Positions 20,162 to 37,781 of a stretch of DNA of 64,000 bases are shown piece by piece (position 1 is the stretch's first letter; every line of letters starts with the position of its first letter). The translations under genes and the position numbers were made by a program. Location: positions 1 to 64,000 of the IMG/VR virus record IMGVR_UViG_3300032294_002797. One strand, given 5' to 3'. Below the pieces are notes generated by a model, which ran no database searches, had not been told where the DNA came from, and saw only the letters and a list, made by a program, of their open reading frames with translations.

Positions 20162-20164
20162 GCA

Positions 20165-22576: not shown

Positions 22577-22579
22577 AAA

Positions 22580-25133: not shown

Positions 25134-25366
25134 TACCAATTCTCCGGCATAGAAATCTCATCAAAACCAATATAGCATATCACTAACGAATTGTCAAACT
25201 GATCCCATTCCAAAGCACCATCATCATATTCTCCATGCCACCAATCACCCCAACCACCTTCTTCTTGATTCCAAGTAAGATCAATAGGAGACGAATATCC
25301 CTTCACGCAACAAAGATATTTCTGATTCACAATAGGATCACCATAATGCCAGTTCATTATTTCCAC
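25133..25366 (-). CDS. hypothetical protein
   Basis: Packed ORF. Confidence 0.65.
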   Translation of the reverse strand: MEIMNWHYGDPIVNQKYLCCVKGYSSPIDLTWNQEEGGWGDWWHGEYDDGALEWDQFDNSLVICYIGFDEISMPENW

Positions 25367-25518
25367 CTAAAACTAAAGTGAGTAGCCTCGTTATCACAAA
25401 TAAACGTAAAATATGCCAGAAAGAACATAGTCAAAGATGGGAAAAATAAAATGATTTTACGAAAGATTCTCATCATGTTTCCTTTTCCACCATTATACCA
25501 TTCTTTATCGTCAAGTCA

Positions 25519-26040
25519 AGTACCGACACACTGATAGTTTTACGAATAACACTCGGTACTATGTTAGTTCAACCTCAAGGTTTTACCTTATCTAAGGAAA
25601 CTATCAGCAGATTTATAACCAGCGAATCTTTTACGCCCCGATTCTATAATCCATATTAGCCTAAATACTCTAGTGCGAATATCTTCGGGAATATGGAAAC
25701 CGTCCACGGAACTCCTCCCTAGAATCGAGTTAAACTTCCGGAATGTTTTTCGATTCATCTGGCTCTTGGAAACGGTTACTGGTATATTTTATATGGCAGA
25801 GTTTTTAGCCTATCACAAAGGATGGGAAGGGCGAACTCTTTTAATCCTAACCTATTATCTAGGAACCATAATATTGTTTATGGGTGTCACCTATTTCTAC
25901 TCATGCTATCGCATTTTCGGAGGCCACATGGAAGGATCGTCACCGGTAACTCCTCTTCGCTCTGTTGTGCTTTGCCTCGTCATACGGAAAACCGTCACCC
26001 ATAAAGTATTGGTCGTGGTGAGGACGCTATCCCCCATAGA
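25519..26040 (-). ncRNA. candidate large structured ncRNA (~520 nt)
   Basis: Own promoter 26049-26076; no minus-strand ORF of 60 aa or more; several 7-10 bp perfect helices and a 3' pseudoknot. Confidence 0.6.
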
Positions 26041-26076
26041 TTGGTATTACTATACAGCATATAACCTTGCTGTCAA

Positions 26077-26260
26077 CCCCGGCGATGATTACGTCTTCGC
26101 TGAACGGGAGGTTTATCGTAATAGGTTATCCAATCTAGTCCCTGAGCATGGACCCACGAAAGTTTGTCATAGTACGCTAGGTTTAGTGCTGCTTCTCTAT
26201 CCTAGCACGGCTTAGTATGATGTTATCTCTGGCACTCAACCGCTATGATTTGTTTTGTCT
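26077..26260 (-). ncRNA. candidate structured RNA (~185 nt)
   Basis: Own promoter 26270-26297; multi-stem junction; no ORF of 60 aa or more. Confidence 0.45.
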
Positions 26261-26326
26261 TACTCAGTCATTCTACAATATATTATCGACTTGTCAAGAG
26301 GGTTTCTTGAAAAAATATTTTTTTGA

Positions 26327-26408
26327 TGTAAGGTGTTGGAGGATAAAGACTTACGACAAATCCGGCGGCGCAAATTCGCCCTAAGTCCCCTTGGGCAAAG
26401 AACTTAGA
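26327..26408. repeat. 82-bp element copy 7
   Basis: 29+24+29. Confidence 0.9.
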
Positions 26409-26419
26409 GCGAACCGCGT

Positions 26420-26902
26420 TTAGGTAGTTGCTTCTTCTGTATCGTCTTTGAAGAATTCTTCCATACCAAACTCATTCCACAATGCGACAGGAATCATATC
26501 CTTACTCGGATATTCCACATAGTTATCAGCACCATTATCCCAAATACCACAGAAAGCCATGCCCGGCTCCCAATAACTAGCCTTTACATCATATCCCAAC
26601 TCAACCAGTTTATCATACAAACCAATAGGAGGACTCCACGCACTATCAAACGAACAACTTACTTGGTTTCCTACCCTAGTAGCCTTCAAGCCGTGATATT
26701 CTTCCCTATCTGTACCCATATCGGCCCCAATATCCCATTTGGTTCCCCAATTATCTATTTGCCAGCCGTACCAATCTTCACCTTCTGGTAGAGGCAGAAA
26801 TTCTTCACAAGCCTTACCCAGATTATAGGCTTTCTCAAATCGGTCAACCATAGAAACATCAGTATGCTCAACCGTCAATTTATTCAAACACCAATTAGGC
26901 AT
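26420..26902 (-). CDS. DUF1281/YubB-like ferredoxin-fold protein
   Basis: MPNWCxNxL, WYGWQIDNWGTKWD, FDSAWSPP and EPGMAFCG motifs. Confidence 0.8.
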   Translation of the reverse strand: MPNWCLNKLTVEHTDVSMVDRFEKAYNLGKACEEFLPLPEGEDWYGWQIDNWGTKWDIGADMGTDREEYHGLKATRVGNQVSCSFDSAWSPPIGLYDKLVELGYDVKASYWEPGMAFCGIWDNGADNYVEYPSKDMIPVALWNEFGMEEFFKDDTEEATT

Positions 26903-26912
26903 CTTTTTTCCT

Positions 26913-27071
26913 TTATTCTATTTCCAAAATCTCATAGACCCCAATCTTAGGATCCATACAATGTTCATCATATTCTTTTTCTTGACGAACCCACTCCCTA
27001 GCATCCTCTATATCGTCAAAATCATAGTTTCTACTTGACCCATTTTCAGTTCTAATCACACGATAGACCAT
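26913..27071 (-). CDS. hypothetical protein
   Basis: Start moved to MVYRVI (GAGG RBS, promoter 27094-27122). Confidence 0.6.
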   Translation of the reverse strand: MVYRVIRTENGSSRNYDFDDIEDAREWVRQEKEYDEHCMDPKIGVYEILEIE

Positions 27072-27135
27072 ACAGACCTCTCTTTCTGCACCAATCATAT
27101 CATAATACAGACTATTTGTCAAGAGCCCATTATTT

Positions 27136-27182
27136 TGGCTGACTATCGCCCATAACCGCAAATCCGTAGGATTAGGAGGGAC
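27136..27182. repeat. dispersed repeat family B copy 5
   Basis: Consensus match; contains the stop of 27172..27333. Confidence 0.85.
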
Positions 27183-27333
27183 AGGATATACGTTCAACTA
27201 AAATATAGTCGCCATATTTTTCTTTGGCTTTTCGTAGAGCATCATATTCGCTCATAGCAACAACGTATCCAACAAAACGATTGTGTTGGAAAACTCGCCA
27301 TGAAATACCGGAATAGCAAAATGTAGTGTTCAT
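27172..27333 (-). CDS. hypothetical protein
   Basis: Probably leaderless, under promoter 27340-27367; ends CPS-stop inside repeat B. Confidence 0.6.
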   Translation of the reverse strand: MNTTFCYSGISWRVFQHNRFVGYVVAMSEYDALRKAKEKYGDYILVERISCPS

Positions 27334-27386
27334 AGAGTTATTGTACCGTATTATCGGCAAGAGTCAAGAGCAAACTTTAGATTATT

Positions 27387-27468
27387 CGTAAAGTCTTGTG
27401 GTATAAGGAGTTAGATCAAATTTTGCGGCGCGCCCTCGCCCTAAGTGCTGCCGTAGCAACAACTTAGG
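27387..27468. repeat. 82-bp element copy 8
   Basis: 29+24+29. Confidence 0.9.
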
Positions 27469-27496
27469 GGAAGGGTTCAACTTTTTAGATTATGAA

Positions 27497-27904
27497 TCAA
27501 GCAAACATAAGTGCCAGATTCGTGGAAAACAGTGCCTTACCACCAATTGGCTTACGCACGTTCGTGGTACGTTCTGCATAGAAGTTACGCACAGTACCAT
27601 TCGGCATTTCGCAAGTCACAAGATGGCGAGTACGCTGAAACTGCGGATCGTTTGCACGATACCGGCTACGGACATTCAAACGGCGGATACTATTATCATC
27701 CAACGTGTGAACTTCCAGAACCTTAGCAAGATAACGCTCAGGATCGCCGTGATGGGGCTGCTCATAAATGAAGTTATAAACTTCGCCGGGAGCAGCATTC
27801 CCCAGACTACCATGAACACCACCATAGATGCTATACAGCGTAAAAGCAATCAGAAGACCAGCAACAACAGCAAACAAACCACCAACCAGAATAAAATCGT
27901 TCAT
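27497..27904 (-). CDS. membrane-anchored protein, possible WYL/SH3-like domain
   Basis: N-terminal TM; C-terminal VRNFYAER resembles WYL RxFxxxR (weak). Confidence 0.6.
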   Translation of the reverse strand: MNDFILVGGLFAVVAGLLIAFTLYSIYGGVHGSLGNAAPGEVYNFIYEQPHHGDPERYLAKVLEVHTLDDNSIRRLNVRSRYRANDPQFQRTRHLVTCEMPNGTVRNFYAERTTNVRKPIGGKALFSTNLALMFA

Positions 27905-28003
27905 ATGAACCCTTTTTGTTGTGAAAACTTTCCCTTATGTCTCACGATTCTACACTACTTATCGGCAAGAGTCAAGTGCTAAGTTTAGAAAAAATATTTT
28001 CGC

Positions 28004-28085
28004 CATAAGTCGTTGCAGCATAAGGAGTTGCGTCAAATTTTGCGGCACCCGCTCGTCCTAAGTGCTTACACACCAAGGGCTTACG
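28004..28085. repeat. 82-bp element copy 9
   Basis: 29+24+29; contains the stop at 28081. Confidence 0.9.
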
Positions 28086-28287
28086 TCAGTACGACAGGCT
28101 CGCTCCTGAACGAACATACAGGCTGGCCGCTTGCCGCAACCAAAACGTCAAGCATTGCACCAACCTGTTCCATACGTTCAACAGGCTGATCCATATCGTA
28201 CTCGGGAATCTCAAGAACAAATTCACGATCCAAACCCACATCACCATTATCGGTTTCGATCACAATATCAAAAAAACGGTGTTGCAT
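28081..28287 (-). CDS. hypothetical protein
   Basis: Single-gene cassette with promoter 28311-28339 and GAGG RBS. Confidence 0.7.
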   Translation of the reverse strand: MQHRFFDIVIETDNGDVGLDREFVLEIPEYDMDQPVERMEQVGAMLDVLVAASGQPVCSFRSEPVVLT

Positions 28288-28366
28288 CTAATCCTCTCTT
28301 TCGTATGCTAATCCTACACTATACTTATCGGCTTGTCAAGCGGGTCTCTTGAAAAATTTTATTTGA

Positions 28367-28448
28367 CGTAAAGCGTTGAGACATAAGGAGTTACGTTAAA
28401 TTTTGCGGCGCCCCCTCGCTCTAAGTTCTTTGGCGGTAAGGGTTTGCG
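28367..28448. repeat. 82-bp element copy 10
   Basis: 29+24+29; contains the stop at 28421. Confidence 0.9.
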
Positions 28449-28972
28449 ACAGGAGGATAAAACTTCATAAAATTCTCAATATGATCGTCATATGCCATAT
28501 TCATATTGTCACAAGTTTCATCAAAACCAATAGAATATCCTTCCTTACCTCTCTTACGGCTATATTCCTGAACATACCTAGTAACATACTTGCTTTCTGT
28601 CCATTTGAAAATCGTACCTTTTGGAGTAATAAAAACCATGAACAAAATATCAAAAAGTTCAGGTTTGATTTTTTGCAAAGTATAATACTTATATTTGTTT
28701 TGATGCAAAGTCAATTTAGCGGTTTTTACTTCGCACCTAATACTATCATTCAAAAGAATATCAAAAATTTTACCGTGACCGTGCCGTTTCACATCATACT
28801 TAGCCCTACTCAAACGATCACACATCAGGCACTCACCAGCATCCCCCATTCCGGTAGAATCCAGATTGGAGATTTTCCAGCATAGATAATTTTTCTTACG
28901 CGAATAAAAATTGTCTGGACGGGAAATTTTGAGATTATGCTTGATCCTGTTGAAATCTCTCATCGTAAACAT
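28421..28972 (-). CDS. PD-(D/E)xK restriction-endonuclease-like protein
   Basis: GDAGE...FDILLN...CEVKTA catalytic pattern; AGGAGG RBS. Confidence 0.7.
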   Translation of the reverse strand: MFTMRDFNRIKHNLKISRPDNFYSRKKNYLCWKISNLDSTGMGDAGECLMCDRLSRAKYDVKRHGHGKIFDILLNDSIRCEVKTAKLTLHQNKYKYYTLQKIKPELFDILFMVFITPKGTIFKWTESKYVTRYVQEYSRKRGKEGYSIGFDETCDNMNMAYDDHIENFMKFYPPVANPYRQRT

Positions 28973-29058
28973 TGCTTTTCCTCCTTATTGGAATACGCTT
29001 AGTCTACAATGCTTATCGGCTAATGTCAATAGATTTAGCCATAAAATTATTTTTTGAT

Positions 29059-29140
29059 CATAAGTCTATATCCCATAACAACTTACGTCAAATTTTCGCC
29101 GCCCCGCTCGCCCTAAGTGCTTACGCACCAAGGGTTTGCG
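29059..29140. repeat. 82-bp element copy 11
   Basis: 29+24+29. Confidence 0.9.
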
Positions 29141-29147
29141 GCGAGTT

Positions 29148-29381
29148 TTATTCAAAGTCTACGAAAATAACTTGATTATATCCACGAGGCTTAATAGTAA
29201 GGCTCTCGCTGTAATCGTAGGTATCGGCCTTTACACCCGTCATACCCGCGAGCAACTTGGCCTTTCGCACAATATTACGCTGAGACGCCCCGCTATTAAT
29301 AGCAAACTCATAACGGTTAGCCCAAGAGTAGTTTGCCTCACCATTAAATGTGTCGGTCTGCGTAACGGTAACCTTCATCAT
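29148..29381 (-). CDS. hypothetical phage protein
   Basis: TDTFNGEANYSW; start moved to MMKVTV. Confidence 0.7.
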   Translation of the reverse strand: MMKVTVTQTDTFNGEANYSWANRYEFAINSGASQRNIVRKAKLLAGMTGVKADTYDYSESLTIKPRGYNQVIFVDFE

Positions 29382-29495
29382 CTTATTATTCCTTTTAGAG
29401 AGAAAAGTGTCGATCCAATTTTTAACGTTTTTAGTAAGCATTTTAACAATTCTGTGTATAATATAGTATACATCAACTATCAGGAGATGAATACT

Positions 29496-29897
29496 ATGTC
29501 AAAATATGATCCTCAAGAATACCAAAGAAACAAACAGGCCTATTTAGAAAGACAGAAACGATACAAGAACAAACACAAGGATACCATCAATGAGCGTCAA
29601 CGTCAATACCGTGAGTCAAATAAATCCCAACTCAATGTTTATGCCAATAGGCGTAAAAATAAAATTAGAGAAAAATATGATGAATATATGCAAGATAAAA
29701 AATGTAGCCATTGTGGATACTCTGATCCTAGATCGTTAGTTTGGCATCATACTGATTCGTCTAACAAAAAGAATGGCGTTGTTCAATTAGTTGGCAAGAA
29801 ACATGGATGGGATACTATTTTAGCAGAAATTAATAAGTGTATATGTTTATGCCATAATTGCCACAATATATTGCATAATCACCAATCATCTCCGTAG
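29496..29897 (+). CDS. HNH endonuclease
   Basis: CSHCG...LVWHH...EINKCICLCHNCH; AGGAG RBS; TGTGTA late-type motif upstream; start moved from 29136. Confidence 0.85.
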   Translation: MSKYDPQEYQRNKQAYLERQKRYKNKHKDTINERQRQYRESNKSQLNVYANRRKNKIREKYDEYMQDKKCSHCGYSDPRSLVWHHTDSSNKKNGVVQLVGKKHGWDTILAEINKCICLCHNCHNILHNHQSSP

Positions 29898-30154
29898 TCG
29901 GAATCGTGGTTATAGTATTCGTCCACACCCCATCCACATGAGCCGAACGCAGATTCAGCATCACCATCCATACTATCATCGTACGAATCATCCCAACCGT
30001 TCTCCAAATCTTCGGCGGTAACATCACCGTAAAAATCTTTATGGTCATCATACAGGTACTCGGCCAAAAGGGCGTCACTAGGATCATGCTCAACAACCAT
30101 ATCATCATCCTCATAAGCGTTATCGGGATCGAACAGTGGATCAGGGTGGCTCAT
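29879..30154 (-). CDS. highly acidic protein
   Basis: Strongly Asp/Glu-rich; AGGAGA RBS. Confidence 0.7.
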   Translation of the reverse strand: MSHPDPLFDPDNAYEDDDMVVEHDPSDALLAEYLYDDHKDFYGDVTAEDLENGWDDSYDDSMDGDAESAFGSCGWGVDEYYNHDSDYGDDW

Positions 30155-30177
30155 TTGTTTTCTCCTTTTCACCAATC

Positions 30178-30360
30178 CTACCAAATAAAATCGTTCGCGT
30201 CAAGAGGCTCGGGATACATTTCTTCCCACAAGCCAGTAACTTCTGCGTAATCAAACGGACTGCAATCGCTAGAGTCAATCGGCTCGGCCAGGGGCTCCAA
30301 GATACCATCTTCGGTCATCTCGTTCAGAATCCGGTTGATTTCATCAAAATCGTTCAGCAT
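30178..30360 (-). CDS. acidic hypothetical protein
   Basis: GGGAGA RBS; promoter 30387-30414. Confidence 0.7.
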   Translation of the reverse strand: MLNDFDEINRILNEMTEDGILEPLAEPIDSSDCSPFDYAEVTGLWEEMYPEPLDANDFIW

Positions 30361-30451
30361 AATTGATTCTCCCTTGTGATACGCTGATTCTATACTAATT
30401 ATCGGTCATGTCAAGCCCGCTCTATAGAAAATCTCTAAAAAAATTTCTTGA

Positions 30452-30533
30452 TGTAAGTCTATGGCAGATAAGGAGTTACGTCGCGGCGGGCGGCGCCGCC
30501 TTGTCCTAAGTACTTTAGGCTCAAGGCTTTACG
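30452..30533. repeat. 82-bp element copy 12
   Basis: 29+24+29; abuts the stop at 30534. Confidence 0.9.
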
Positions 30534-30845
30534 TCAATTTCCCACAACCATACCGTCTATAAACGGATAGGATTTATCGTTGATTTTCACAAACCATTCG
30601 AAATTCTTTTGATAAACATAACGTGGGCTATACTGGTTAATTCGATCTTTAGTAGTCAGAGTTTGCCAGCCACCACTATTCAGTGTATAGGTATCATCCT
30701 CATGAATCTTCACCACATAGGTGCTGTGTAGTCTAATTCCTACGCTACCATCATGCAGAATTTCAGCGTAAGTATTATTACCAACCTTGCGAGTATCCCG
30801 ATTAGTCTTACCACGAACCATACTAACTGCTTCGGAATGATTCAT
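30534..30845 (-). CDS. hypothetical phage protein
   Basis: LNSGGWQTLTTKDRIN motif typical of small phage early proteins. Confidence 0.75.
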   Translation of the reverse strand: MNHSEAVSMVRGKTNRDTRKVGNNTYAEILHDGSVGIRLHSTYVVKIHEDDTYTLNSGGWQTLTTKDRINQYSPRYVYQKNFEWFVKINDKSYPFIDGMVVGN

Positions 30846-30994
30846 TACTTGTTTTCCTTTTTCTTGGACTCGACCATCTCACGATACAGATTTTCCAGAA
30901 ACCTAACTTGTGCAACTGCACGGCCAGTTTCTTGCTTCATGCGAGTTTCTGTTTTCTGGTACTCGCTAACCGGCTTTCTCTTGGTTTTCATCAT
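30845..30994 (-). CDS. basic hypothetical protein
   Basis: AGGAGA RBS; promoter 31011-31039. Confidence 0.6.
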   Translation of the reverse strand: MMKTKRKPVSEYQKTETRMKQETGRAVAQVRFLENLYREMVESKKKENK

Positions 30995-31069
30995 CTTTCT
31001 CCTGCGATTGATTCTACAGTATAGATCGGCAAGAGTCAAGCATAATCTTTAGCAGATTTTTATTTTGTT

Positions 31070-31151
31070 CTTAAGTCGTTGGAATATAAGGAGTTACGTC
31101 GAATTTTGCGGCGCAAATTTTCCCTAAGTGCTTATGCAGTAAGGGTTTGCG
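31070..31151. repeat. 82-bp element copy 13
   Basis: 29+24+29; contains the stop of 31132..31293. Confidence 0.9.
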
Positions 31152-31293
31152 TCTCTTTTATCCATCGCCTTTTCAACTGTTTTGCAAGATGTTGTATTCG
31201 GTTCATAATAGCGGCCCGCTGTAACGGATGTTGTACAGTGGACAAACGTATCTGTTCGATTCGCAGAATATCTTGAAGCACTCGCGTTTTCAT
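31132..31293 (-). CDS. hypothetical protein (53 aa, below ORF-track cutoff)
   Basis: MKTRVLQDILRIEQIRL... starts 3 nt after the upstream stop. Confidence 0.55.
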   Translation of the reverse strand: MKTRVLQDILRIEQIRLSTVQHPLQRAAIMNRIQHLAKQLKRRWIKETQTLTA

Positions 31294-31295
31294 TT

Positions 31296-31664
31296 TTATT
31301 CCTTCCAAGCAAACGGAGAAATTTCCTCACCACAAGCCAGAATCGCAGCGTACTGGTGAGCAAGAGCCTCAACCCTTTCACGAGAACCCGGCTTGCCAGC
31401 CTTCACGATCATACTATCCTCACCACCCACAAATCGCGGGTCGTTGGTTTCCTTTTTAATCTTGCCCAGATTCTTGAGAGCCTTACGATTAAACTTGAGC
31501 ACCTTTTCGCTCACAACATACCTACCATGATCCTGCACACCGGACACATAGTCCACACCTTCCACAACCCGAGAGTCAGGAACCGGAACCAGAGTAGGAA
31601 TCGCAATTCCCTTGAAAACCATTCGTGCTTGACGCTTCGCATTTTCGATAATTTCAAACTTCAT
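31296..31664 (-). CDS. hypothetical protein, paralog of 34771..35085
   Basis: Shared NAKRQARMVFxGIAIPT...GKPGSxERVxALAxQYAAI...CGEExSPF. Confidence 0.85.
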   Translation of the reverse strand: MKFEIIENAKRQARMVFKGIAIPTLVPVPDSRVVEGVDYVSGVQDHGRYVVSEKVLKFNRKALKNLGKIKKETNDPRFVGGEDSMIVKAGKPGSRERVEALAHQYAAILACGEEISPFAWKE

Positions 31665-31703
31665 TTTCTTTCTCCTTTGGATTGGTTGGATTCTAGCAAA
31701 ATT

Positions 31704-31940
31704 TCAAGAGGCTGTCAACTCCATTTCCTCGATCATTTCCGCAAACGGAATCATCTTGGAAACGAGCGTCTGCTCAGTATTGTCATCATGGAAGAACGTT
31801 TGTACACTGTCGTTTTCCAGAAACACCGTAACTTGGAATCCGCAGATACTAGCGAAACCGCCGGTCGTGCGACGAATCCACATATCCTTCTCACCAAGAA
31901 ACCTAGCAGCAACCTTTTCAACCATCTCTTGCGTAATCAT
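31704..31940 (-). CDS. hypothetical protein
   Basis: Polypurine leader; promoter near 31966-31994. Confidence 0.7.
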   Translation of the reverse strand: MITQEMVEKVAARFLGEKDMWIRRTTGGFASICGFQVTVFLENDSVQTFFHDDNTEQTLVSKMIPFAEMIEEMELTAS

Positions 31941-32013
31941 CTCTTTCTCTCTTTCTTATACGGGAATTATACCTTAGTTATCGGCAAAAGTCAAGCAGAA
32001 TATTTAGAGAATT

Positions 32014-32042
32014 TTTAAATCCTTATTTCTCAACACTTTACG
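32014..32042. repeat. family A single 29-bp site
   Basis: TTTAAATCCTT-N7-AACACTTTACG. Confidence 0.65.
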
Positions 32043-32086
32043 TCAAGACCGGCCTGAATGGACACTTAGAATCTTGAGAAACTGAT

Positions 32087-32168
32087 CGTAAACCCTTGGC
32101 AGATAAGGAGTTACGTCAAATTTTGCGGCGCCGCCTCGCCGTAAGTGCTTATACAGCAAGGCTTTGCG
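32087..32168. repeat. 82-bp element copy 14
   Basis: 29+24+29. Confidence 0.9.
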
Positions 32169-32543
32169 TCAACTATTTACAACCCAGGCCGCTATACATC
32201 CGATCACGAATGAACAAAACAGCATAATCTGATCATTCTTTATCATTTTTTCTATGATCCTTTGAAGGGTAAACCAAATCAGAAACAAGCCAACTGCACC
32301 CAATACCCACCACAAATCCCACAAACATCCAAATCCATTCTACATTTAGATCGGCCATCCCTAGCACCCCTCTTTAGTTTTTATTCTACAGGAATTTTAC
32401 TGATCATGTACCCTAAGAAAAACCCTAGAGTCACAATAAAATTTAGACCCATCAAATATACAAGAATATTCATAAACCTTCACCTCTCTTTTCCACATTC
32501 TATACTATTATCGGCCTGCGTCAAGCCCAAGGTACAGTCTTTT

Positions 32544-32590
32544 TGGCTGACTAAACCCACTCAGCCCAAATCCGCAGGATTACCTGGGAC
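32544..32590. repeat. dispersed repeat family B copy 6
   Basis: Consensus match; contains the stop of 32580..32750. Confidence 0.85.
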
Positions 32591-32750
32591 ACTTATCCAT
32601 CACAGTATCCAGATATATCCCATCTTTACTCACAACCCATCCATATTCTACATCTTGCCCATAGACCCCAATATAACACCGACCTTTATCACACCCTTCG
32701 ATCTTGCACTCATAACCCACCAGACCCATCAACATAACCCAAATTGCCAT
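32580..32750 (-). CDS. hypothetical protein (56 aa)
   Basis: MAIWVMLMGLVGYECK...DKCPR-stop; AAGGA upstream. Confidence 0.5.
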   Translation of the reverse strand: MAIWVMLMGLVGYECKIEGCDKGRCYIGVYGQDVEYGWVVSKDGIYLDTVMDKCPR

Positions 32751-32788
32751 AGTTATCCAGAATCCTTTCTTTGACCAGACTATGTTTT

Positions 32789-32835
32789 TCGCTGACTATA
32801 CCCAACCTACCCAAATCCGTAGGATTACGTGGGAC
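32789..32835. repeat. dispersed repeat family B copy 7
   Basis: Consensus match; contains the stop of 32825..33031. Confidence 0.85.
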
Positions 32836-33031
32836 AAGAGAACAGTTCTACATCCGAAATAACTCGCACACACTTTTTGTTTTCGTCTACTTCATAGACT
32901 GAGCAATCGTACTGATATAAAAAACGATTACCGATATCTCTTTGCCAGACTACCCTTGCTTCATCCAGACTATCATACAGACGGTAATCTTGAATGAAAC
33001 CATCAAACACTATTGCAAACTTATTTTTCAT
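32825..33031 (-). CDS. hypothetical protein
   Basis: Ends CPT-stop inside repeat B. Confidence 0.65.
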   Translation of the reverse strand: MKNKFAIVFDGFIQDYRLYDSLDEARVVWQRDIGNRFLYQYDCSVYEVDENKKCVRVISDVELFSCPT

Positions 33032-33042
33032 TTTCTAACTTT

Positions 33043-33270
33043 CTACGAAACCGAAACCATAGAGGGATTCTTACGAAACTCCATAGCATACAATTCATCG
33101 ACCACAACCCGGACTACAGTATCCATGTTTACGTTTTTATGAGTGTGGTATCCGATCACGTTTGACCAGACATTGTATGTTCCATCCAAATTGTGCATGA
33201 TAGTCATATCAGCCTTTTTTGCATAGGCATGGATTTTGCTACGAATCGTACTAGACTTAGGAATTTTCAT
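33043..33270 (-). CDS. hypothetical protein
   Basis: Start moved to MKIPKS; polypurine leader; TTGACG/TATAAT promoter upstream. Confidence 0.65.
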   Translation of the reverse strand: MKIPKSSTIRSKIHAYAKKADMTIMHNLDGTYNVWSNVIGYHTHKNVNMDTVVRVVVDELYAMEFRKNPSMVSVS

Positions 33271-33347
33271 TTTCTTTTTCTTTCTTTCTCTTTCGACTAT
33301 TATACCAAACTTTTTCGCCGCCGTCAACCCCCTTATCGGGGGAGACA

Positions 33348-33551
33348 CTAGATTTTCCAACAGGCAAAAACCAGCGTAAACTGTGCATTCGGATACTTCG
33401 ACCGAATGTACGCTTCTGCTGTAGACTTCCTATTGTCCGTAGCACTCACACCTTGCACAGTCTTACCATCTATCACAACATTCCAGATTCGACGCTTGCG
33501 AATCTTAGGGAGACTACCGATAAAACTGTTGACACTGATAACTTTTTCCAT
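33348..33551 (-). CDS. hypothetical protein
   Basis: Polypurine leader. Confidence 0.65.
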   Translation of the reverse strand: MEKVISVNSFIGSLPKIRKRRIWNVVIDGKTVQGVSATDNRKSTAEAYIRSKYPNAQFTLVFACWKI

Positions 33552-33610
33552 TTTCTTTCTCTAACTTTCTAAACTTACCTAACTTACCAAAATCCCCCGG
33601 ATAGAGCAGA

Positions 33611-33772
33611 CTATGCTGCTTCACCATCATCGTAACCGGGAATATAGTCGGCATCGTCTGCGACTAATTCACAATGTTCACCACAATCGGGACAAATACC
33701 GTAGTCCATTCGGATACCGGTCATCTCAACTCCACAGCAATCCGAAACGTAATCAAAATCAGGATTTCTCAT
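33611..33772 (-). CDS. small Zn-ribbon protein (53 aa)
   Basis: MRNPDFDYVSDCCG...ICPDCGEHC; directly below the sigma54-type promoter. Confidence 0.65.
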   Translation of the reverse strand: MRNPDFDYVSDCCGVEMTGIRMDYGICPDCGEHCELVADDADYIPGYDDGEAA

Positions 33773-33804
33773 TCTAACTCTCTCTTTCTTATGCCATATA
33801 TAAA

Positions 33805-33820
33805 TGCACTTCCCGTGCCA
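33805..33820 (-). promoter_or_regulatory. sigma54 (-24/-12) promoter
   Basis: TGGCACGGGAAGTGCA = GG-N10-GC; no sigma70 promoter seen in this cassette head. Confidence 0.6.
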
Positions 33821-33842
33821 AACCCAAAAATATTTTTTGTGT

Positions 33843-33871
33843 CGTAAAGTGTTGCCCCATAAGGGTTTACG
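33843..33871. repeat. family A single 29-bp site
   Basis: CGTAAAGTGTT-N7-AAGGGTTTACG, between the sigma54 promoter and enhancer-like boxes. Confidence 0.75.
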
Positions 33872-33903
33872 ATTTTGCTTAGTTCGTGAGCAGCGTCTGC
33901 CTA

Positions 33904-33983
33904 TGTAGCATTATGCAACAGTGCTGTAGCATTTTGCGTCGCGTATTTCGGCCTAAAACATTAAAGTGAAGCAAATTGCAACA
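33904..33983. promoter_or_regulatory. three phased palindromic boxes (enhancer/UAS-like)
   Basis: TGTAGCA-N3-TGCAACA-like at 33904, 33925 and 33967 (21 and 42 bp apart). Confidence 0.55.
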
Positions 33984-33999
33984 CCACAATATATAGTGT
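33984..33999. promoter_or_regulatory. NrdR-box-like operator
   Basis: CCACAATATATAGTGT, 15/16 match to consensus acaCwAtATaTwGtgt. Confidence 0.55.
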
Positions 34000-34030
34000 G
34001 CCTCAAAATTAGGCACCACAAGGCACTTGC

Positions 34031-34112
34031 CGTAAGTCGTTACCACATAAGCACTTACGTCAAATTTTTGGGCGAAAATTCGTCGTAACTCCTTACATAG
34101 CAAGGGTTTACG
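34031..34112. repeat. 82-bp element copy 15
   Basis: 29+24+29. Confidence 0.9.
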
Positions 34113-34131
34113 TCGAACTTTTTAGGCTTTA

Positions 34132-34344
34132 TTACTTATTCCAATTAACATACCACTCTTGCCCATCTTGGCTCATCGTGCGAAGGAACCCACGCTTCCT
34201 CCAGTACCTATCTTGCATATACTGGTCATATATTCCCCATACCTTAGCAAATACCCAAAATCCCACATTACCCACAAGGTATAGAAACCCAAACATGAGA
34301 GAGATGGTCACAACCCACATACCCATAATCCAAAGCGTAGTCAT
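34132..34344 (-). CDS. small membrane protein
   Basis: Hydrophobic N-terminal half. Confidence 0.7.
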   Translation of the reverse strand: MTTLWIMGMWVVTISLMFGFLYLVGNVGFWVFAKVWGIYDQYMQDRYWRKRGFLRTMSQDGQEWYVNWNK

Positions 34345-34358
34345 TTGTTTTTCCTTAG

Positions 34359-34544
34359 TTAGTTAGCAAAACCAATATAGTCGCAAACCACACACTTGTC
34401 AAGATACATGGATCGGAAACCCACATTCTCGATTTCCATGGTAAACAGGAGACGGTTTCCATTCATATACTTGAACGAAACCACCTTACCCGTAAACTTC
34501 TCACCCGTACCGTACTCAACCGAAAGAATGTTTCCAATCGTCAT
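34359..34544 (-). CDS. hypothetical protein (SH3-like)
   Basis: Start moved to MTIGNI; TTGAAT/TATAAT promoter upstream. Confidence 0.65.
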   Translation of the reverse strand: MTIGNILSVEYGTGEKFTGKVVSFKYMNGNRLLFTMEIENVGFRSMYLDKCVVCDYIGFAN

Positions 34545-34660
34545 TTTCTTTTTCCTTTTCTCTTGTGTGTTTCTATTATACATACTTAATCGACCAATTC
34601 AAGAGAAAAATCCAGAAAATTTCAAATATAATTTCATGCCAAAGTTTAAAAAAATCTTGC

Positions 34661-34742
34661 TGTAAGTCGTTACGTAGCAAGTACTTACGTCAAATTTTTG
34701 GGCAAAAATTCGTCGTAACTCCTTATGCTGTAAGGGTTTACA
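34661..34742. repeat. 82-bp element copy 16
   Basis: 29+24+29; linker nearly identical to copy 15. Confidence 0.9.
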
Positions 34743-34770
34743 TCGAGTTTTTTGTACAGTGTACAGAAGA

Positions 34771-35085
34771 TTACCCCTCTGAGAAGGGGGATACTTCTTC
34801 TCCACACTCCATAATCGCGGCATATTGTGAGGCGAGAGCCTGCACACGCTCAGATGAGCCAGGCTTTCCCACACGCATGATCATATGATCAGTACCCCCC
34901 ACAAAGCGGGGATCGTTCTTTTCCACCTTACGCTTGCCCATATTCTTCAGGGCGGTTCGGTTGAATTTGATCACCTTCTCAACTTGGATATCTTCACCAT
35001 CTATGTTTTTCACTTCGGTAGGGATTGCTATTCCCAGGAAAACCATTCTGGCTTGTCGTTTTGCATTTCGGATAATCGGATACAT
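34771..35085 (-). CDS. hypothetical protein, paralog of 31296..31664
   Basis: Clear end-to-end similarity. Confidence 0.85.
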   Translation of the reverse strand: MYPIIRNAKRQARMVFLGIAIPTEVKNIDGEDIQVEKVIKFNRTALKNMGKRKVEKNDPRFVGGTDHMIMRVGKPGSSERVQALASQYAAIMECGEEVSPFSEG

Positions 35086-35126
35086 TTCTTTTTCTTTCTG
35101 TTTAGAGTGTAGGATTGTTGGATAAC

Positions 35127-35357
35127 TTAGGGAAGCCAGGCATCATCCACAACATAGCCCATCTCGTCAACTTCAATCCAACCACCATCATCACAGAATC
35201 CAATTTCCTCATCTATGTTAATCTGGTTAAACTTATTAACCCTTGCCAGAAGATCACCAGCAAAAGCAACCCTATTCACCAGAGTATCGAGCGAAGTCTT
35301 ATTGAGGAACTCGGTCAACTCAGTCACAGTATTCAGAACAATCAGGTTAGCAAACAT
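35127..35357 (-). CDS. hypothetical protein
   Basis: First gene of the leftward region; polypurine leader; TTGAAG/TATAAT promoter. Confidence 0.7.
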   Translation of the reverse strand: MFANLIVLNTVTELTEFLNKTSLDTLVNRVAFAGDLLARVNKFNQINIDEEIGFCDDGGWIEVDEMGYVVDDAWLP

Positions 35358-35487
35358 TTTTCTTTCTCTCTTTTTTCTCTTTTTCTTATATCGACATTAT
35401 ACCATGCTTTCTTGAAACTTCAAGAGAAAAATAGGAATTTTTATGTCAAGAGATTTTGACAAAACTTTTACGATTTATCGGCCCGAT

Positions 35488-35521
35488 TGGCACACCTTTT
35501 GCTATCGCAAGAGTCATGCCA
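35488..35521. promoter_or_regulatory. face-to-face pair of sigma54-type sites
   Basis: + TGGCACACCTTTTGCT (35488-35503) and - TGGCATGACTCTTGCG (35521-35506), both GG-N10-GC. Confidence 0.55.
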
Positions 35522-35532
35522 AAAAAAGTTGT

Positions 35533-35614
35533 TGTAAGTGCTTGTGGCATAAGGAGTTACATCAAATTTTTGGGGGCAAATATACCCTAAGTCCTTATAC
35601 CACAATAGGTTAGG
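35533..35614. repeat. 82-bp element copy 17
   Basis: 29+24+29; rightmost copy, no adjacent gene end. Confidence 0.9.
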
Positions 35615-35811
35615 GGGTTTTTTCGTTTATGTTACCCATTTCCCCCAAACTTCGAAAATCGCCCGGTGGTACAAACATAATAAGGACACAATAAAGTAAA
35701 TGTATCACCTAAACCACCCCTATAGACCCACTTTAATGATAAACTTAAATAATTTATGGGTTGTTGCTAGTAACCAGAGTAGCTTTTATTGTCTAAAAAT
35801 ACAGTTAATAT

Positions 35812-36174: not shown

Positions 36175-36360
36175 ATGAGTAATTCCAAAAAAATCACCAA
36201 TGTTGCTTCTGTGCTGTGTACTAAAGCTTCAGGATGTATCGAAAATATAGCGGATGATCTTAACCAACCAGATGGAAAGTGTATAGCAGAGCTTATAAAT
36301 GACCAAGAAAAATCTCAAGCCCAAGAAATGCCCATCAACACTTCCGAACAATGTAAATGA
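36175..36360 (+). CDS. hypothetical protein
   Basis: First rightward ORF, after TTGACA-17-TATTAT at about 36112-36140. Confidence 0.5.
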   Translation: MSNSKKITNVASVLCTKASGCIENIADDLNQPDGKCIAELINDQEKSQAQEMPINTSEQCK

Positions 36361-36955
36361 GCAAGAATTTTTGACAGTATTGGATAATATTAGTAAAAGA
36401 TTGGCCTATAAATTCCAGTTCGGCTATCATAGTTTTGAGGATATGAAACAGCAGGCAGCCATATTTGCTCTAGAAGGCCTGGAAAAATATGACAAAAAAC
36501 GCCCCTTAGAAAACTTCTTATGGACCCACGTAAGAAATAGGCTATTTAACTATAAACGAGATAATTATCAAAGACCCGATAAACCCTGTATTAGTTGTAG
36601 ATTTTTTGATAAACATTGTAAGAACTCTACTAATCAGTGTTTAGAATATACAAATAAAGATGACTGCGAAGAATATGCAGCATGGAATAATAGAAACTCT
36701 AGAAAAAAGAACATAATGAAACCGGTAGGAATAGACGATCTGTCTGAAAGTCTCACCAGTGGAAATGCCAAACATTCAATATTAGATATTGTAGCTAATG
36801 AACAAATAATCACCCTGTTAGACAAACATATTCCTGCACAATACAGAGAAACATACTTGAGATTGAAGCATGGAGATAAAGTCTATAAGTCAGATCTCGT
36901 TAAATTAACCAAAGTTATTAAAAATATTTTATCTGAAAATAATTATGACATCTAA
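36299..36955 (+). CDS. phage RNA polymerase sigma-factor-like protein
   Basis: Sigma region 2 pattern (EDMKQ...LEKYD...FLWTHVRNRLFNYKR), Cys-rich insert, degenerate region 4. Confidence 0.75.
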   Translation: MTKKNLKPKKCPSTLPNNVNEQEFLTVLDNISKRLAYKFQFGYHSFEDMKQQAAIFALEGLEKYDKKRPLENFLWTHVRNRLFNYKRDNYQRPDKPCISCRFFDKHCKNSTNQCLEYTNKDDCEEYAAWNNRNSRKKNIMKPVGIDDLSESLTSGNAKHSILDIVANEQIITLLDKHIPAQYRETYLRLKHGDKVYKSDLVKLTKVIKNILSENNYDI

Positions 36956-37781
36956 TTCTAAAATACCTAAAAAAAGAGGACAATTAAGTTTAGATGAAGA
37001 AAAATATATTAGAGATAATATTACAACATTAAGTATTGATGAAATTGCTCAACATTTAAATCGAAGCTCAACTCCTATCGAGAGATACATTAGAGAATCT
37101 AAAATCAATTTATCGTCTCACGAAGAACAAATTAATGATCGAATACTTAGACAAAAACTATATACAAAAACATTTTGGCCAGAAATAGAAAAACAATTTG
37201 ATAAAGATAGCGGAGAATTAGCATATTTTGAAAATACATGGATAGGACTCATCAAACAATTTAGAGAAGACGTTTTAGCAGCAGAAGAATTACAAATTAA
37301 ACAGTTTATTACAATAGATATTCTCATCAATCGCAGTATGAAAGAAAGAAAGCGACACATAGCTGACACTGAAAAGCTTCAGGTACAAGTCGATAAAGAA
37401 TATACTAAACCAGAGGACCAAAGAGATATTGCTAAATTGTCTAATTTAGAAACACAACTAAGTTTCGCTAGAAATAGTATTGCTAATTATACTAATGAAT
37501 ATACTAAACTATTAAATGAACAACAAAAGATAAGCAAAGATTTAAAAGCTACGCGAGAACAGCGCATAAAACGCATAGAAGATGGTAAAAGCTCTTGGAT
37601 AGGCTTAATACGAATGTTAGAAGATGAAAATATTAGAGAAAAAGAAGGAAGACAAATGGAAATTATGGCTATGGCGGTAGAAAAAAGTAAAAATAAACTA
37701 GCTGAATACCACGAATATGCAGATCAAATAGTAGACAGCCCATTACTCACACCAGAAATCATTTTAGACAGAGGAGAATAG
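36945..37781 (+). CDS. HTH plus coiled-coil protein (possible terminase small subunit)
   Basis: N-terminal HTH (SIDEIAQHLNRS), long coiled coil, lies upstream of terL. Confidence 0.55.
   Translation: MTSNSKIPKKRGQLSLDEEKYIRDNITTLSIDEIAQHLNRSSTPIERYIRESKINLSSHEEQINDRILRQKLYTKTFWPEIEKQFDKDSGELAYFENTWIGLIKQFREDVLAAEELQIKQFITIDILINRSMKERKRHIADTEKLQVQVDKEYTKPEDQRDIAKLSNLETQLSFARNSIANYTNEYTKLLNEQQKISKDLKATREQRIKRIEDGKSSWIGLIRMLEDENIREKEGRQMEIMAMAVEKSKNKLAEYHEYADQIVDSPLLTPEIILDRGE

What the first reader, a model, noticed from the sequence alone, without database searches (positions are those of the whole stretch)
33790..34030. Non-coding hub of host regulator sites: sigma54 promoter, IHF-like site, phased enhancer-like boxes and an NrdR box
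Seen, within 240 bp: GG-N10-GC promoter TGGCACGGGAAGTGCA (33820-33805) above a Zn-ribbon gene with no visible sigma70 promoter; a lone family A site (33843-33871); three TGTAGCA-N3-TGCAACA-like boxes 21 and 42 bp apart; CCACAATATATAGTGT; and a GTGCCT-N7-AGGCAC palindrome. Known: UAS, then IHF site, then -24/-12 is the classic sigma54 layout, which supports reading family A as IHF-like. The 16-mer matches the NrdR box, yet no nrd gene is adjacent. Inference: either a phage cassette wired to a host enhancer-binding protein, or decoy DNA that soaks up host regulators. NrdR titration would derepress host ribonucleotide reductase.
Basis: partly seen in the sequence, partly recalled or inferred. Interest (0 to 1): 0.75.

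Follow-up and report, generated by a model that had tools for sequence, protein, structure and literature searches.

The report
Phage promoter using host sigma-54
An uncultured freshwater jumbo phage carries a textbook sigma-54 promoter with three upstream activator sites in front of two tiny early genes; the module is conserved across its relatives, so the phage probably ties these genes to a host signalling regulator it does not encode.

Summary
The core reading holds; two side readings do not.

The window is the first 64 kb of a 223-kb uncultured freshwater jumbo phage. The 359-bp gap at 33773-34131 contains:
- a -24/-12 element (33805-33820, minus strand) with one mismatch to YTGGCACG-N4-TTGCW;
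- three dyad boxes at 33904, 33925 and 33967, centred about -118, -139 and -181 from the predicted start at 33794.

Neither the promoter motif nor the NrdR-like box is significant in the window alone. In 17 homologous modules from related phages, however, TGGCA and TGC are invariant while the spacer and flanks vary (52% mean identity). The three boxes keep their spacing.

The box core equals the LuxO/NtrC-type site TTGCA-N3-TGCAA. The same two-box layout follows NtrC-family activator genes in two bacterial genomes. The phage and four complete relatives encode no sigma-54 and no activator, so host factors are implied.

- **Family A as an IHF site:** not supported.
- **NrdR-like box:** a real, recurrent part of about half the modules, but single here and not next to nrd genes.
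- **Decoy reading:** unsupported.
- **Still missing:** the host's identity and a mapped transcription start.

The parts
33805..33820 (-). Sigma-54 type -24/-12 promoter element TGGCACGGGAAGTGCA (GG at 33819-33818, GC at 33807-33806)
   Evidence: One mismatch to TGGCACG-N4-TTGCW. TGGCA and TGC are invariant in 17 homologous modules while the spacer varies. The consensus is cited in PMC3352281.
33792..33796 (-). Predicted transcription start, about 33794 (12 nt below the C of the -12 GC). It lies at the end of the conserved TTATATA stretch (33797-33803).
   Evidence: Inferred from sigma-54 promoter geometry. The TATATA stretch is >=70% conserved in alignment A1. No start-site data exist: the metatranscriptome material is contigs only.
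33773..33791 (-). Purine-rich leader and ribosome-binding region (..AAGAAAGAGAGAGTTAGA) before the ATG at 33772
   Evidence: Read from the sequence. The same leader follows the motif in the related modules.
33826..33838 (.). A/T tract (AAAAAATATTTTT on the minus strand) just upstream of -24
   Evidence: Conserved in most modules of alignment A1. A role in DNA bending is inferred, not tested.
33843..33871 (.). Lone family A inverted-repeat site in the enhancer-promoter spacer
   Evidence: Weak member of the family (13.2 bits). Present at this position only here and in L050/L100, where it lengthens the spacer from 80 to 91-92 nt, about one helical turn. No IHF consensus.
33904..33920 (.). Proximal activator box TGTAGCATTATGCAACA (centre about -118)
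33925..33941 (.). Middle activator box TGTAGCATTTTGCGTCG (centre about -139), 21 bp from the proximal box
33948..33959 (-). Conserved inter-box segment GTTTTAGGCCGA (minus strand), role unknown
   Evidence: Conserved in most of the modules that have the 42-44 bp box spacing; L050 differs at this segment
33967..33983 (.). Distal activator box TGAAGCAAATTGCAACA (centre about -181), 42 bp from the middle box
33984..33999 (.). NrdR-box-like palindrome CCACAATATATAGTGT abutting the distal box
   Evidence: One mismatch to the consensus, and all six highly conserved positions are present. A similar palindrome occurs in 10 of 20 unique modules, against a 0.2% background. It is the only good box in the 223-kb genome.
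33998..34016 (-). Inverted repeat GTGCCT-N7-AGGCAC; possible end of the upstream transcription unit
   Evidence: Flagged as terminator-like with a poor T tail. Conserved in the closest modules, but folding across homologues is inconsistent. An RNA-library contig ends next to it (weak).
34026..34123 (.). Family A double element following the stop codon of the upstream gene; not part of the promoter module
   Evidence: Repeat family D2, 10 copies; matrix scan
33611..33772 (-). First gene of the unit: 53-aa Cys-rich Zn-ribbon-like protein (invariant DCC..C-x2-C-x-EHCE), function unknown
   Evidence: No family match in Pfam, NCBIfam, PHROGs or PDB sequences. It is the first or second gene below 9 of 17 modules.
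33348..33551 (-). Second gene of the unit: 67-aa protein of unknown function. Its homologue sits directly below the module in L004 and L005.

Best explanation
The 33790-33985 segment is an enhancer-dependent sigma-54 promoter of a lytic-type jumbo phage. It drives the Zn-ribbon gene (33611-33772) and probably the next small gene (33348-33551).

Proposed mechanism, with status of each step:
1. Host RNA polymerase carrying sigma-54 binds the -24/-12 element at 33805-33820 as a closed complex. (Inferred from motif identity and its conservation.)
2. Dimers of a host NtrC-family activator (LuxO/NtrC/AtoC-like, with a Fis-type DNA-binding domain) bind the three dyad boxes, which are set 2 and 4 helical turns apart. 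Three dimers could form the active hexamer. (Inferred from box sequence, phasing and two bacterial look-alikes.)
3. The roughly 90-bp spacer, with an A/T tract and a short inverted repeat, lets the activator loop onto the polymerase. (Inferred.)
4. ATP hydrolysis opens the AT-rich TTATATA stretch and transcription starts near 33794. (Not shown.)

Because the phage has no sigma-54 and no activator, expression of these early accessory genes would depend on the state of a host two-component signalling pathway. The NrdR-like palindrome abutting the distal box may add a second host input, but that is unproven. Family A and the GTGCCT palindrome belong to the general intergenic architecture of the early region, not to the promoter itself.
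For: Promoter motif:
- One mismatch to the sigma-54 consensus. No sigma-70 promoter is called in front of the gene.
- In 17 homologous modules with 52% mean column identity, the only invariant blocks near the start are TGGCA and TGC. The 5-7 nt between them vary.

Enhancer boxes:
- Three boxes with a GCA-W3-TGC core precede the motif in those modules. In the group that includes the window they are spaced 20-21 and 42-44 bp apart; other groups use 19+33 or 12+19/20 bp. The proximal box centre lies 70-94 nt from TGGCA, and at 79-81 nt in about half of the modules.
- An exact two-box pattern hits only 10 of 2.9 million viral contigs. All 10 belong to this lineage. In 9 the scan found a sigma-54 motif beside the boxes; in the tenth the motif is visibly present but has ATGC at -12, which the scan did not accept.
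- The box core equals the LuxO site TTGCA-N3-TGCAA (PMC3352281).
- In bacterial genomes the same two-box pattern lies just after a LuxO-like activator gene (L085). It also lies after an AtoC/NtrC-like activator gene and about 95 nt upstream of CTGGCACGGAATTTGCC (L087).

Genomic context:
- Sigma-54 motifs are enriched more than 100-fold (exact) in relatives. They cluster in the early region of complete genomes, with zero hits for the reversed control pattern.
- No sigma-54 DNA-binding or core-binding domain, no Fis-type helix-turn-helix and no GAFTGA motif occur in the genome. The only AAA+ hit is RuvB-like. Four complete relatives lack a sigma-54 DNA-binding domain and an activator AAA+ domain as well.

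Weak support:
- RNA-library contigs cover the two downstream genes (33416-33735) and the upstream gene plus family A element (34025-34311), but not the enhancer-promoter segment.

Precedent:
- Pseudomonas phage YuA has a sigma-54-like promoter (PMC10914365).
Against: - No transcription start has been mapped. The RNA evidence is a handful of low-depth contigs from related strains, and DNA carry-over is not excluded.
- The host is unknown, so the presence of rpoN and of a matching activator is an inference. The one bacterial bin holding a related phage contig shows no sigma-54 domain, although bin membership is not a reliable host call.
- In relatives, most sigma-54 motifs (68 of 114) point against the early genes, abut hairpins and have no local enhancer. 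The motif therefore may have a second, non-promoter use in this lineage.
- The -14 position is G rather than T in the window, though this variant recurs in eight of the 17 aligned modules.
Confidence: 0.8

Rival explanations
1. Decoy hub. The sites are not used for transcription but titrate host regulators (activator, sigma-54 holoenzyme, NrdR) as the phage genome replicates, for example to derepress host ribonucleotide reductase.
For: - The sites are good matches to host-factor consensus sequences.
- Many sigma-54 motifs in relatives lack an enhancer and point away from genes.
- Sigma-54 holoenzyme binds promoters stably without firing (general knowledge; see also PMC4591121 listed).
Against: - The module has full promoter geometry and points at a ribosome-binding site and ORF at a fixed distance in 17 modules.
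- This genome has only one enhancer module and three sigma-54 motifs in 223 kb.
- A single NrdR box is a poor NrdR ligand.
- The phage carries its own reductase.
Confidence: 0.07
2. Iteron-type origin or operator array. The three phased palindromic boxes plus the A/T tract bind a phage-encoded protein (replication initiator or repressor), and the -24/-12 look-alike is incidental to that.
For: Phased 17-bp dyads next to an AT-rich stretch and inverted repeats resemble iteron origins such as lambda ori (from memory). The boxes are lineage-specific among viral contigs.
Against: - Some relatives carry two or three modules per early region, each in front of a different small gene.
- TGGCA and TGC are invariant, and the box-to-motif distance is 79-81 nt in about half the modules (70-94 overall), so the motif is not incidental.
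- The same boxes sit next to activator genes and a sigma-54 promoter in bacteria.
Confidence: 0.05
3. The NrdR-like palindrome (33984-33999) is a genuine NrdR operator. When NrdR is loaded with dATP and ATP, it blocks the distal activator box, coupling the promoter to the host dNTP pool.
For: - All six highly conserved NrdR-box positions are present.
- A like palindrome abuts the distal box in 10 of 20 unique modules, against a 0.2% background.
- In a small subclade a second box lies 27 bp away, so the pair brackets the distal box. E. coli NrdR binds pairs with 26-27-bp spacers at 24-27 nM (PMC12051234).
Against: - The window has one box. The candidate partner with a 16-bp linker (34016-34031) lacks A8, T9, T11 and G13.
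- Two boxes are needed for high-affinity binding.
- About half of the modules lack the palindrome, and the paired form occurs in only 3 viral contigs.
- It is not in an nrd promoter.
Confidence: 0.25
4. Chance clustering of consensus look-alikes in an AT-rich intergenic region.
For: Within the window alone, the sigma-54 and NrdR patterns are not more frequent than in shuffles.
Against: Module-level conservation in many diverged relatives, with invariant -24/-12 letters and conserved box phasing.
Confidence: 0.01

Closest known systems
Classical NtrC-type sigma-54 promoters (e.g. enteric glnAp2, from memory) and LuxO-activated qrr promoters of Vibrionaceae (PMC3352281)
   Same: A -24/-12 element matching YTGGCACG-N4-TTGCW. 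Dyad activator sites of 17 bp with a (T/A)GCA-N3-TGC(A/T) core, about 100-180 bp upstream and phased by whole helical turns. No -35/-10 promoter.
   Different: It lies in a virulent-type jumbo phage genome that has no sigma-54 and no activator. It has three sites spaced 21 and 42 bp apart. The half-site TGTAGCA differs from NtrC's TGCACCA, and is closer to LuxO's TTGCA. No IHF consensus is present. The genes served are tiny phage proteins of unknown function.
Sigma-54-like promoter of Pseudomonas phage YuA (Ceyssens et al. 2008, as cited in PMC10914365)
   Same: A phage transcription unit attributed to host sigma-54.
   Different: YuA is a 58-kb siphovirus of a known host (size and morphology from memory), with experimental promoter-trap and start-site support. 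No enhancer module is mentioned in the passage I read. Here the module is conserved across a large uncultured lineage and comes with a three-site enhancer, but has no experimental support.
Bacterial two-component locus in L087 (histidine kinase, AtoC/NtrC-like activator, two boxes, sigma-54 promoter)
   Same: Boxes TGTTGCA-N3-TGCAAC spaced 21 bp apart, with a TGGCAC-N5-TTGC promoter about 95 nt downstream.
   Different: It has two boxes rather than three. The activator gene is adjacent. The organism is unclassified (49% GC) and is not shown to be related to the phage's host.
NrdR operators of bacterial nrd operons (PMC13584703, PMC12051234)
   Same: A 16-bp partial palindrome with C4, A6, A8, T9, T11 and G13.
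   Different: A single box rather than a pair. It is not in front of nrd genes and abuts an activator site.

Membership tests
Sigma-54 (RpoN) dependent promoter | GG and GC doublets exactly 10 nt apart within YTGGCACG-N4-TTGCW | tested here: met
   One mismatch (G for T at -14). TGGCA and TGC are invariant in 17 homologous modules. A logo of 190 sites reproduces the consensus.
Sigma-54 (RpoN) dependent promoter | Transcription starts 11-13 nt downstream of the -12 GC | tested here: inconclusive
   Only assembled contigs of two metatranscriptome runs could be laid. They cover 33416-33735 and 34025-34311 and leave 33761-33957 empty, and they give no 5' ends.
Sigma-54 (RpoN) dependent promoter | Upstream activator sites within about 80-200 bp | tested here: met
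   Three dyad boxes centred 92, 113 and 155 nt from the T of TGGCA.
Sigma-54 (RpoN) dependent promoter | The cell in which it acts has rpoN and an AAA+ activator | not testable with these tools
   Host unknown. The phage and four complete relatives lack both.
NtrC/LuxO-type activator binding site | Dyad-symmetric site with a TTGCA-N3-TGCAA-like core, several copies on one face of the helix | tested here: met
   Cores GCATTATGC, GCATTTTGC and GCAAATTGC, spaced 21 and 42 bp apart. Consensus from PMC3352281.
NtrC/LuxO-type activator binding site | The same site type is associated with NtrC-family activator genes in bacteria | tested here: met
   Two of six genome hits lie directly after activator genes: L085 (LuxO-like) and L087 (AtoC/NtrC-like, with a sigma-54 promoter downstream). 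At least one other hit (L084) may be a terminator-like hairpin between convergent genes (my reading of the sequence, not tested).
NtrC/LuxO-type activator binding site | Bound by the activator protein | not testable with these tools
   Needs the host protein and a binding assay.
   Zero exact matches to WATCAR-N4-TTR on either strand in the 90-nt spacers of 24 modules, the window's included.
   About 35 family A sites lie in the early region, and only this one is in an enhancer module. Family A fills the spacer in only 2 of the 17 aligned modules.
NrdR operator | 16-bp box with C4, A6, A8, T9, T11 and G13 | tested here: met
   CCACAATATATAGTGT at 33984-33999.
NrdR operator | Two boxes separated by 15-16 bp (or one helical turn more) | tested here: not met
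   The 16-mer after a 16-bp linker (34016-34031, CCACAAGGCACTTGCC) keeps only the left half, and there is no box at 25-27 bp on either side. A 27-bp pair exists only in three related contigs.
NrdR operator | Lies in the promoter region of a ribonucleotide reductase operon | tested here: not met
   The phage reductase gene is at 137-138.6 kb with no box upstream. No nrd gene lies near 33984.
Intrinsic terminator (GTGCCT-N7-AGGCAC) | GC-rich hairpin followed by a U run on the transcribed strand | tested here: inconclusive
   A 6-bp stem with tail ACTATATATT. Minimum-energy folds of six homologues disagree.

The most novel reading that the evidence does not exclude
This abundant freshwater jumbo-phage lineage has co-opted host sigma-54 more broadly than as one regulated promoter.

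- Enhancer-equipped modules would let early accessory genes read a host two-component signal. In some relatives they may also read the dNTP pool, through NrdR boxes bracketing an activator site.
- The more numerous enhancer-less sigma-54 motifs point against the early genes and abut hairpins. They might act as non-initiating polymerase roadblocks or insulators behind transcription-unit ends, as antisense RNA promoters, or as a sink for sigma-54 holoenzyme.
Probability: 0.15. Interest if true: 0.85.

Novelty: new variant of a known kind. Interest (0 to 1): 0.62.

Why it matters
- **Rare wiring.** Virulent phages are usually thought to run early genes from strong sigma-70 promoters and then switch to their own factors. 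An enhancer-dependent sigma-54 promoter cannot fire without an activated host AAA+ regulator. These phage genes would therefore be conditional on a host signal such as cell density, nitrogen or stress.
- **Few precedents.** Documented phage sigma-54 promoters are very few. YuA is the one I found.
- **Host prediction.** The host must carry rpoN. This excludes cyanobacteria and actinobacteria (their lack of rpoN is from my own knowledge).
- **A handle for experiments.** The box sequence can be used to find the cognate host regulator.

Tried and rejected
**Host identification failed.**
- There is no DNA match and only distant (about 26%) terminase matches to cultured phages.
- The genome scan returned a related phage contig inside an unclassified 1.8-Mb bin (about 44% GC in the one 4-kb stretch read, RpoB frame 1145 aa, no sigma-54 domain). 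I do not trust this for host assignment.
- The protein-atlas look-up of its RpoB gave no usable taxonomy.
- Two freshwater virome papers did not cover this lineage.

**Transcript evidence was too thin.**
- Only two metatranscriptome runs hold related sequence, and only as assembled contigs, so no 5' ends were available.

**Searches for phage-encoded factors were negative.**
- Phage-encoded activator: the only PF00158 hit is a RuvB-like AAA+ protein, and no frame contains a GAFTGA motif.
- Phage sigma-54, Fis-type DNA-binding domain and ATP-cone/NrdR: none.

**Alternative readings of individual elements were rejected or left open.**
- TATATA below the -12 element as a sigma-70 -10 or a phage late-promoter motif: the spacing to TTGGCA is 12-15 nt, and the motif is not a recurrent upstream element in the genome.
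- GTGCCT palindrome as a conserved RNA hairpin: folds of the homologues disagree.
- Family A as an RNA hairpin versus a protein site: the outer arms co-vary (CGTAAG..CTTACG against CCTAAG..CTTAGG), but symmetric sites for a dimer would do the same, so this is left open.

**The Zn-ribbon protein could not be assigned.**
- No match in Pfam, NCBIfam, PHROGs or PDB sequences. I did not predict its structure.

**One scan hit was discounted.**
- The two-box hit in a 70%-GC deltaproteobacterial genome (L084) lies between convergent genes. I read the two boxes as able to pair into a roughly 13-bp hairpin, so it is not counted as an enhancer (not tested).
Full report
**1. What the window is**

The window is the first 64 kb of a single 223,302-bp viral record rated complete.
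- It has no DNA match among cultured phages. Its large terminase is only about 26% identical to the nearest cultured ones.
- IMG/VR holds at least 599 terminase relatives at 76-84% identity, several on contigs of 190-230 kb.
- Public runs that hold the sequence are mostly lake and other freshwater or aquatic metagenomes; one is labelled marine.
- From about 16 to 36.1 kb the genome carries small minus-strand genes, nine tRNA genes and higher G+C (0.38-0.46 against 0.28-0.35 over the rest of the window, apart from 44-48 kb at 0.38). It is also dense in intergenic repeats.
- Those repeats include strong sigma-70-type promoters on the minus strand and a roughly 98-nt 'family A' double element.

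**2. The observation**

The finding lies in the 359-bp gap between a 70-aa gene (34132-34344, minus) and a 53-aa Cys-rich gene (33611-33772, minus).

Taken alone in the window, the sigma-54 and NrdR matches are no more frequent than in shuffled sequence. The box pattern is enriched, with 11 matches against 5.2 expected. No sigma-70-type promoter is called in front of the Zn-ribbon gene.

**3. Comparative evidence for a sigma-54 promoter**

The early region is mosaic among relatives, but homologues of the Zn-ribbon gene occur in 15 of 80 terminase-anchored loci. Their upstream regions show the same motif again and again.
- Across 1.22 Mb of related loci there are 52 exact and 146 one-mismatch matches to TGGCAYG-N4-TTGCW. 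Resampled sequence gives about 0.4 and 12.
- In complete relatives the motifs cluster in a few kb of the early region. The reversed control pattern gives zero hits.
- A logo of 190 unique sites reads TT-TGGCA-C/T-A/G-..-ATT-TGC-T, which is the sigma-54 consensus (consensus quoted in PMC3352281).
- Seventeen modules have the window's layout: boxes, spacer, motif, TATATA, purine-rich leader, ATG. They align with 52% mean identity, and TGGCA and TGC are the invariant blocks while the nucleotides between them vary.

This is the signature of selection on -24/-12 recognition, not of shared descent alone. The TATATA stretch between -12 and the predicted start is too close to TTGGCA (12-15 nt) to form a sigma-70 promoter. 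It is also not a recurrent upstream motif elsewhere in the genome.

**4. The boxes are an enhancer**
- Each aligned module has three boxes with a GCA-W3-TGC core, except one copy with two exact cores. In the window's group they are spaced 20-21 and 42-44 bp apart, two and four helical turns. Two other groups use 19+33 or 12+19/20 bp.
- The proximal box centre lies 79-81 nt upstream of the T of TGGCA in about half of the modules. It lies 91-92 nt in the window and in L050/L100, the two with a family A site in the spacer (about one extra turn). It lies 70-73 or 94 nt in the rest.
- In the window the box centres fall near -118, -139 and -181.
- An exact two-box pattern occurs in only 10 of 2.9 million viral contigs, all of this lineage. 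Nine have a sigma-54 motif that the scan picked up beside the boxes; eight of these have it 105-116 nt downstream and pointing into a gene. The tenth (L099) has the motif with ATGC at -12, which the scan did not accept.
- The box core equals the LuxO site TTGCA-N3-TGCAA. From memory, the 17-bp geometry is that of NtrC sites.
- In bacterial genomes the same pattern gave six hits:
  - one is a related phage contig binned into a MAG;
  - one lies directly after a LuxO-like activator gene (L085);
  - one lies directly after a histidine kinase and AtoC/NtrC-like activator pair and about 95 nt upstream of CTGGCACGGAATTTGCC (L087).

**5. Who supplies the factors**

The phage genome has no sigma-54 DNA-binding or core-binding domain and no Fis-type helix-turn-helix. 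No reading frame contains a GAFTGA-like motif. Its only hit to the activator AAA+ family is a RuvB-like protein. Four complete relatives lack a sigma-54 DNA-binding domain and an activator AAA+ domain too.

Host sigma-54 and a host activator are therefore implied. I could not identify the host. The inference predicts a host with rpoN. The early sigma-70 promoters are of the TTGACA-N17-TATAAT type, which argues against Bacteroidota; their different promoter type is from my own knowledge.

**6. Transcript data**

Two metatranscriptome runs hold related sequence, but only as assembled contigs. Pieces cover 33416-33735 (both downstream genes) and 34025-34311 (upstream gene plus family A element). 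Nothing lies on 33761-33957. This fits a unit that ends near 34020 and another that begins below 33800. However, depth is 3-5, the strains differ by 1-10%, and DNA carry-over cannot be excluded. It is not a start-site map.

**7. Family A is not an IHF site**
- A matrix built from the double elements finds about 35 sites, nearly all between 15.6 and 35.9 kb. All but the lone site lie away from the single enhancer module.
- The lone site at 33843-33871 is a weak member (13.2 bits).
- In the aligned modules the same spacer position holds unrelated short inverted repeats, and family A occurs there only in the window and L050.
- The IHF consensus is absent from all 24 spacers examined.

What is shared is an A/T tract (AAAAAATATTTTT) next to -24 and some short inverted repeat. 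This would fit a bendable spacer, but that is inference.

**8. The NrdR-like box**

The 16-mer carries all six highly conserved NrdR-box positions and is the only good match in the genome.
- For: a similar palindrome directly abuts the distal box in 10 of 20 unique modules, against a background of 0.2%, so it is a real optional part of the module. In a small subclade a second box lies 27 bp away, so the pair brackets the distal activator site. E. coli NrdR binds 26-27-bp-spaced pairs well.
- Against, for the window: there is one box only, and the candidate partner fails. High-affinity binding needs two boxes. No nrd gene is nearby. The phage's own reductase gene has no box.

I put genuine NrdR binding at about 0.25.

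**9. The GTGCCT palindrome**

It is conserved in the closest modules and is flagged as terminator-like with a poor tail. Folds of homologues disagree. Together with the RNA contig that ends beside it, the best guess is that it marks the end of the upstream unit. This is weak.

**10. What the promoter serves**

The first or second gene below 9 of 17 modules is the Zn-ribbon protein, with invariant DCC..C-x2-C-x-EHCE. In L004 and L005 the 67-aa gene's homologue comes first. Neither protein matches any family.

**11. Comparison with what is known**

The module works like a classical NtrC/LuxO-type sigma-54 promoter, and it passes the sequence-level membership tests for one. Start site, host rpoN and activator binding are untested.

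In the literature I could search, the one phage precedent is the sigma-54-like promoter of Pseudomonas phage YuA. Reports of rpoN affecting phage sensitivity in Salmonella work through host physiology.

New here are the lineage-wide conservation of a three-site enhancer module in jumbo phages that lack the factors, its pairing with an NrdR-like palindrome, and the many enhancer-less motifs described next.

**12. Unexplained**

In relatives, 68 of 114 unique sigma-54 motifs point against the early genes. Most of these sit a few nucleotides before a hairpin-forming element: a family A site, CTGCCA..TGGCAG or CCCC..GGGG. Others form face-to-face pairs. The window has one such pair at 35488-35521, upstream of a strong sigma-70 promoter. 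Only the gene-directed modules and their divergent partners have a local enhancer. I have no tested explanation.

**13. Verdict**
- Confidence in the promoter reading is 0.8.
- Interest is moderate to high. It is a known kind of element in an unusual carrier, conserved across an abundant uncultured phage lineage, and it makes testable predictions about the host.

Noticed in passing
window 35488-35521: Two sigma-54-type motifs face to face (TGGCACACCTTTTGCT on plus, TGGCATGACTCTTGCG on minus, 2 nt apart). They lie about 65 nt upstream of a strong sigma-70 promoter (35423-35396) with the conserved TGGTATAATGTCGATATAAGA. The same palindromic arrangement recurs in relatives (L032, L056, L009, L059).
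   Followed up: partly
relatives, e.g. L041:488-4202, L009:594-2944, L052:814-5152: Most sigma-54-type motifs in related phages (68 of 114) point against the early genes. Most of these are followed within about 5-20 nt by hairpin-forming elements, and few have a local enhancer. One genome has 8 such sites on one strand within 4 kb.
   Followed up: partly
L004:4619-4888, L005:4252-4521, L005:5543-5812, L105: A subclade has two NrdR-like boxes (CCACAAnATnTAGTGG and CGYCTATATRTAGGTT) 27 bp apart, bracketing the distal activator box. Only three viral contigs carry this pair.
   Followed up: partly
window 16880-35625 (14-15 copies, e.g. 34026-34123, 34656-34753): Family A double element of about 98 nt: two inverted-repeat sites (CGTAAG..CTTACG or CCTAAG..CTTAGG) flanking a GC-rich centre. 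It usually lies just after a stop codon and before the next promoter, is confined to the early region, and is conserved in relatives. Its function is unknown (terminator, RNA processing or protein site).
   Followed up: partly
window 12594-32836 (6-7 copies, e.g. 27132-27183, 32785-32836): A second intergenic repeat family: GCTGACTAT...CAAATCCGTAGGATTAGG..GACA, with an AATCC-N-GGATT hairpin. In relatives the GGATTAGG part follows some antisense sigma-54 motifs.
   Followed up: no
window 3190-32530 (repeat families D13-D16, D18): Early sigma-70-type promoters on the minus strand share not only TTGAC and TAnnnT but also a conserved spacer (..TGCCGATAAGTA..). This suggests an extra recognition element or a bound factor.
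   Followed up: no
window 36299-36955 (+) and 36945-37781 (+): At the point where transcription turns to the plus strand, the phage encodes a small sigma-70-family protein (region 2 only, 26 bits). Next to it is a D5-like transcriptional-regulator-like protein.
   Followed up: no
window 47946-62018 (+): A single open reading frame of 4690 aa downstream of the terminase and structural block.
   Followed up: no
window 18993-22652 (-): Nine tRNA genes, all reading A/T-ending codons, including tRNA-Ile(TAT) and a tRNA-Ser with anticodon ACT.
   Followed up: no
window 760-1536 and 10665-11429 (+): Two plus-strand ORFs inside the minus-strand region contain 78-nt and 24-nt periodic lysine/asparagine-rich repeats (repeat family D7).
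   Followed up: no
L083 (RFTN01000003.1, 141-kb contig of 'MAG: bacterium WB4_3_0875'): A species-representative bacterial MAG contains a 141-kb contig of this phage lineage. The rest of the bin has a bacterial rpoB and no sigma-54 domain. This looks like binning contamination rather than evidence of the host.
   Followed up: partly
G000 137275-138624 (-), outside the window: The phage encodes its own ribonucleotide reductase large subunit (565-aa frame, no ATP-cone), with no NrdR-like box upstream.
   Followed up: yes
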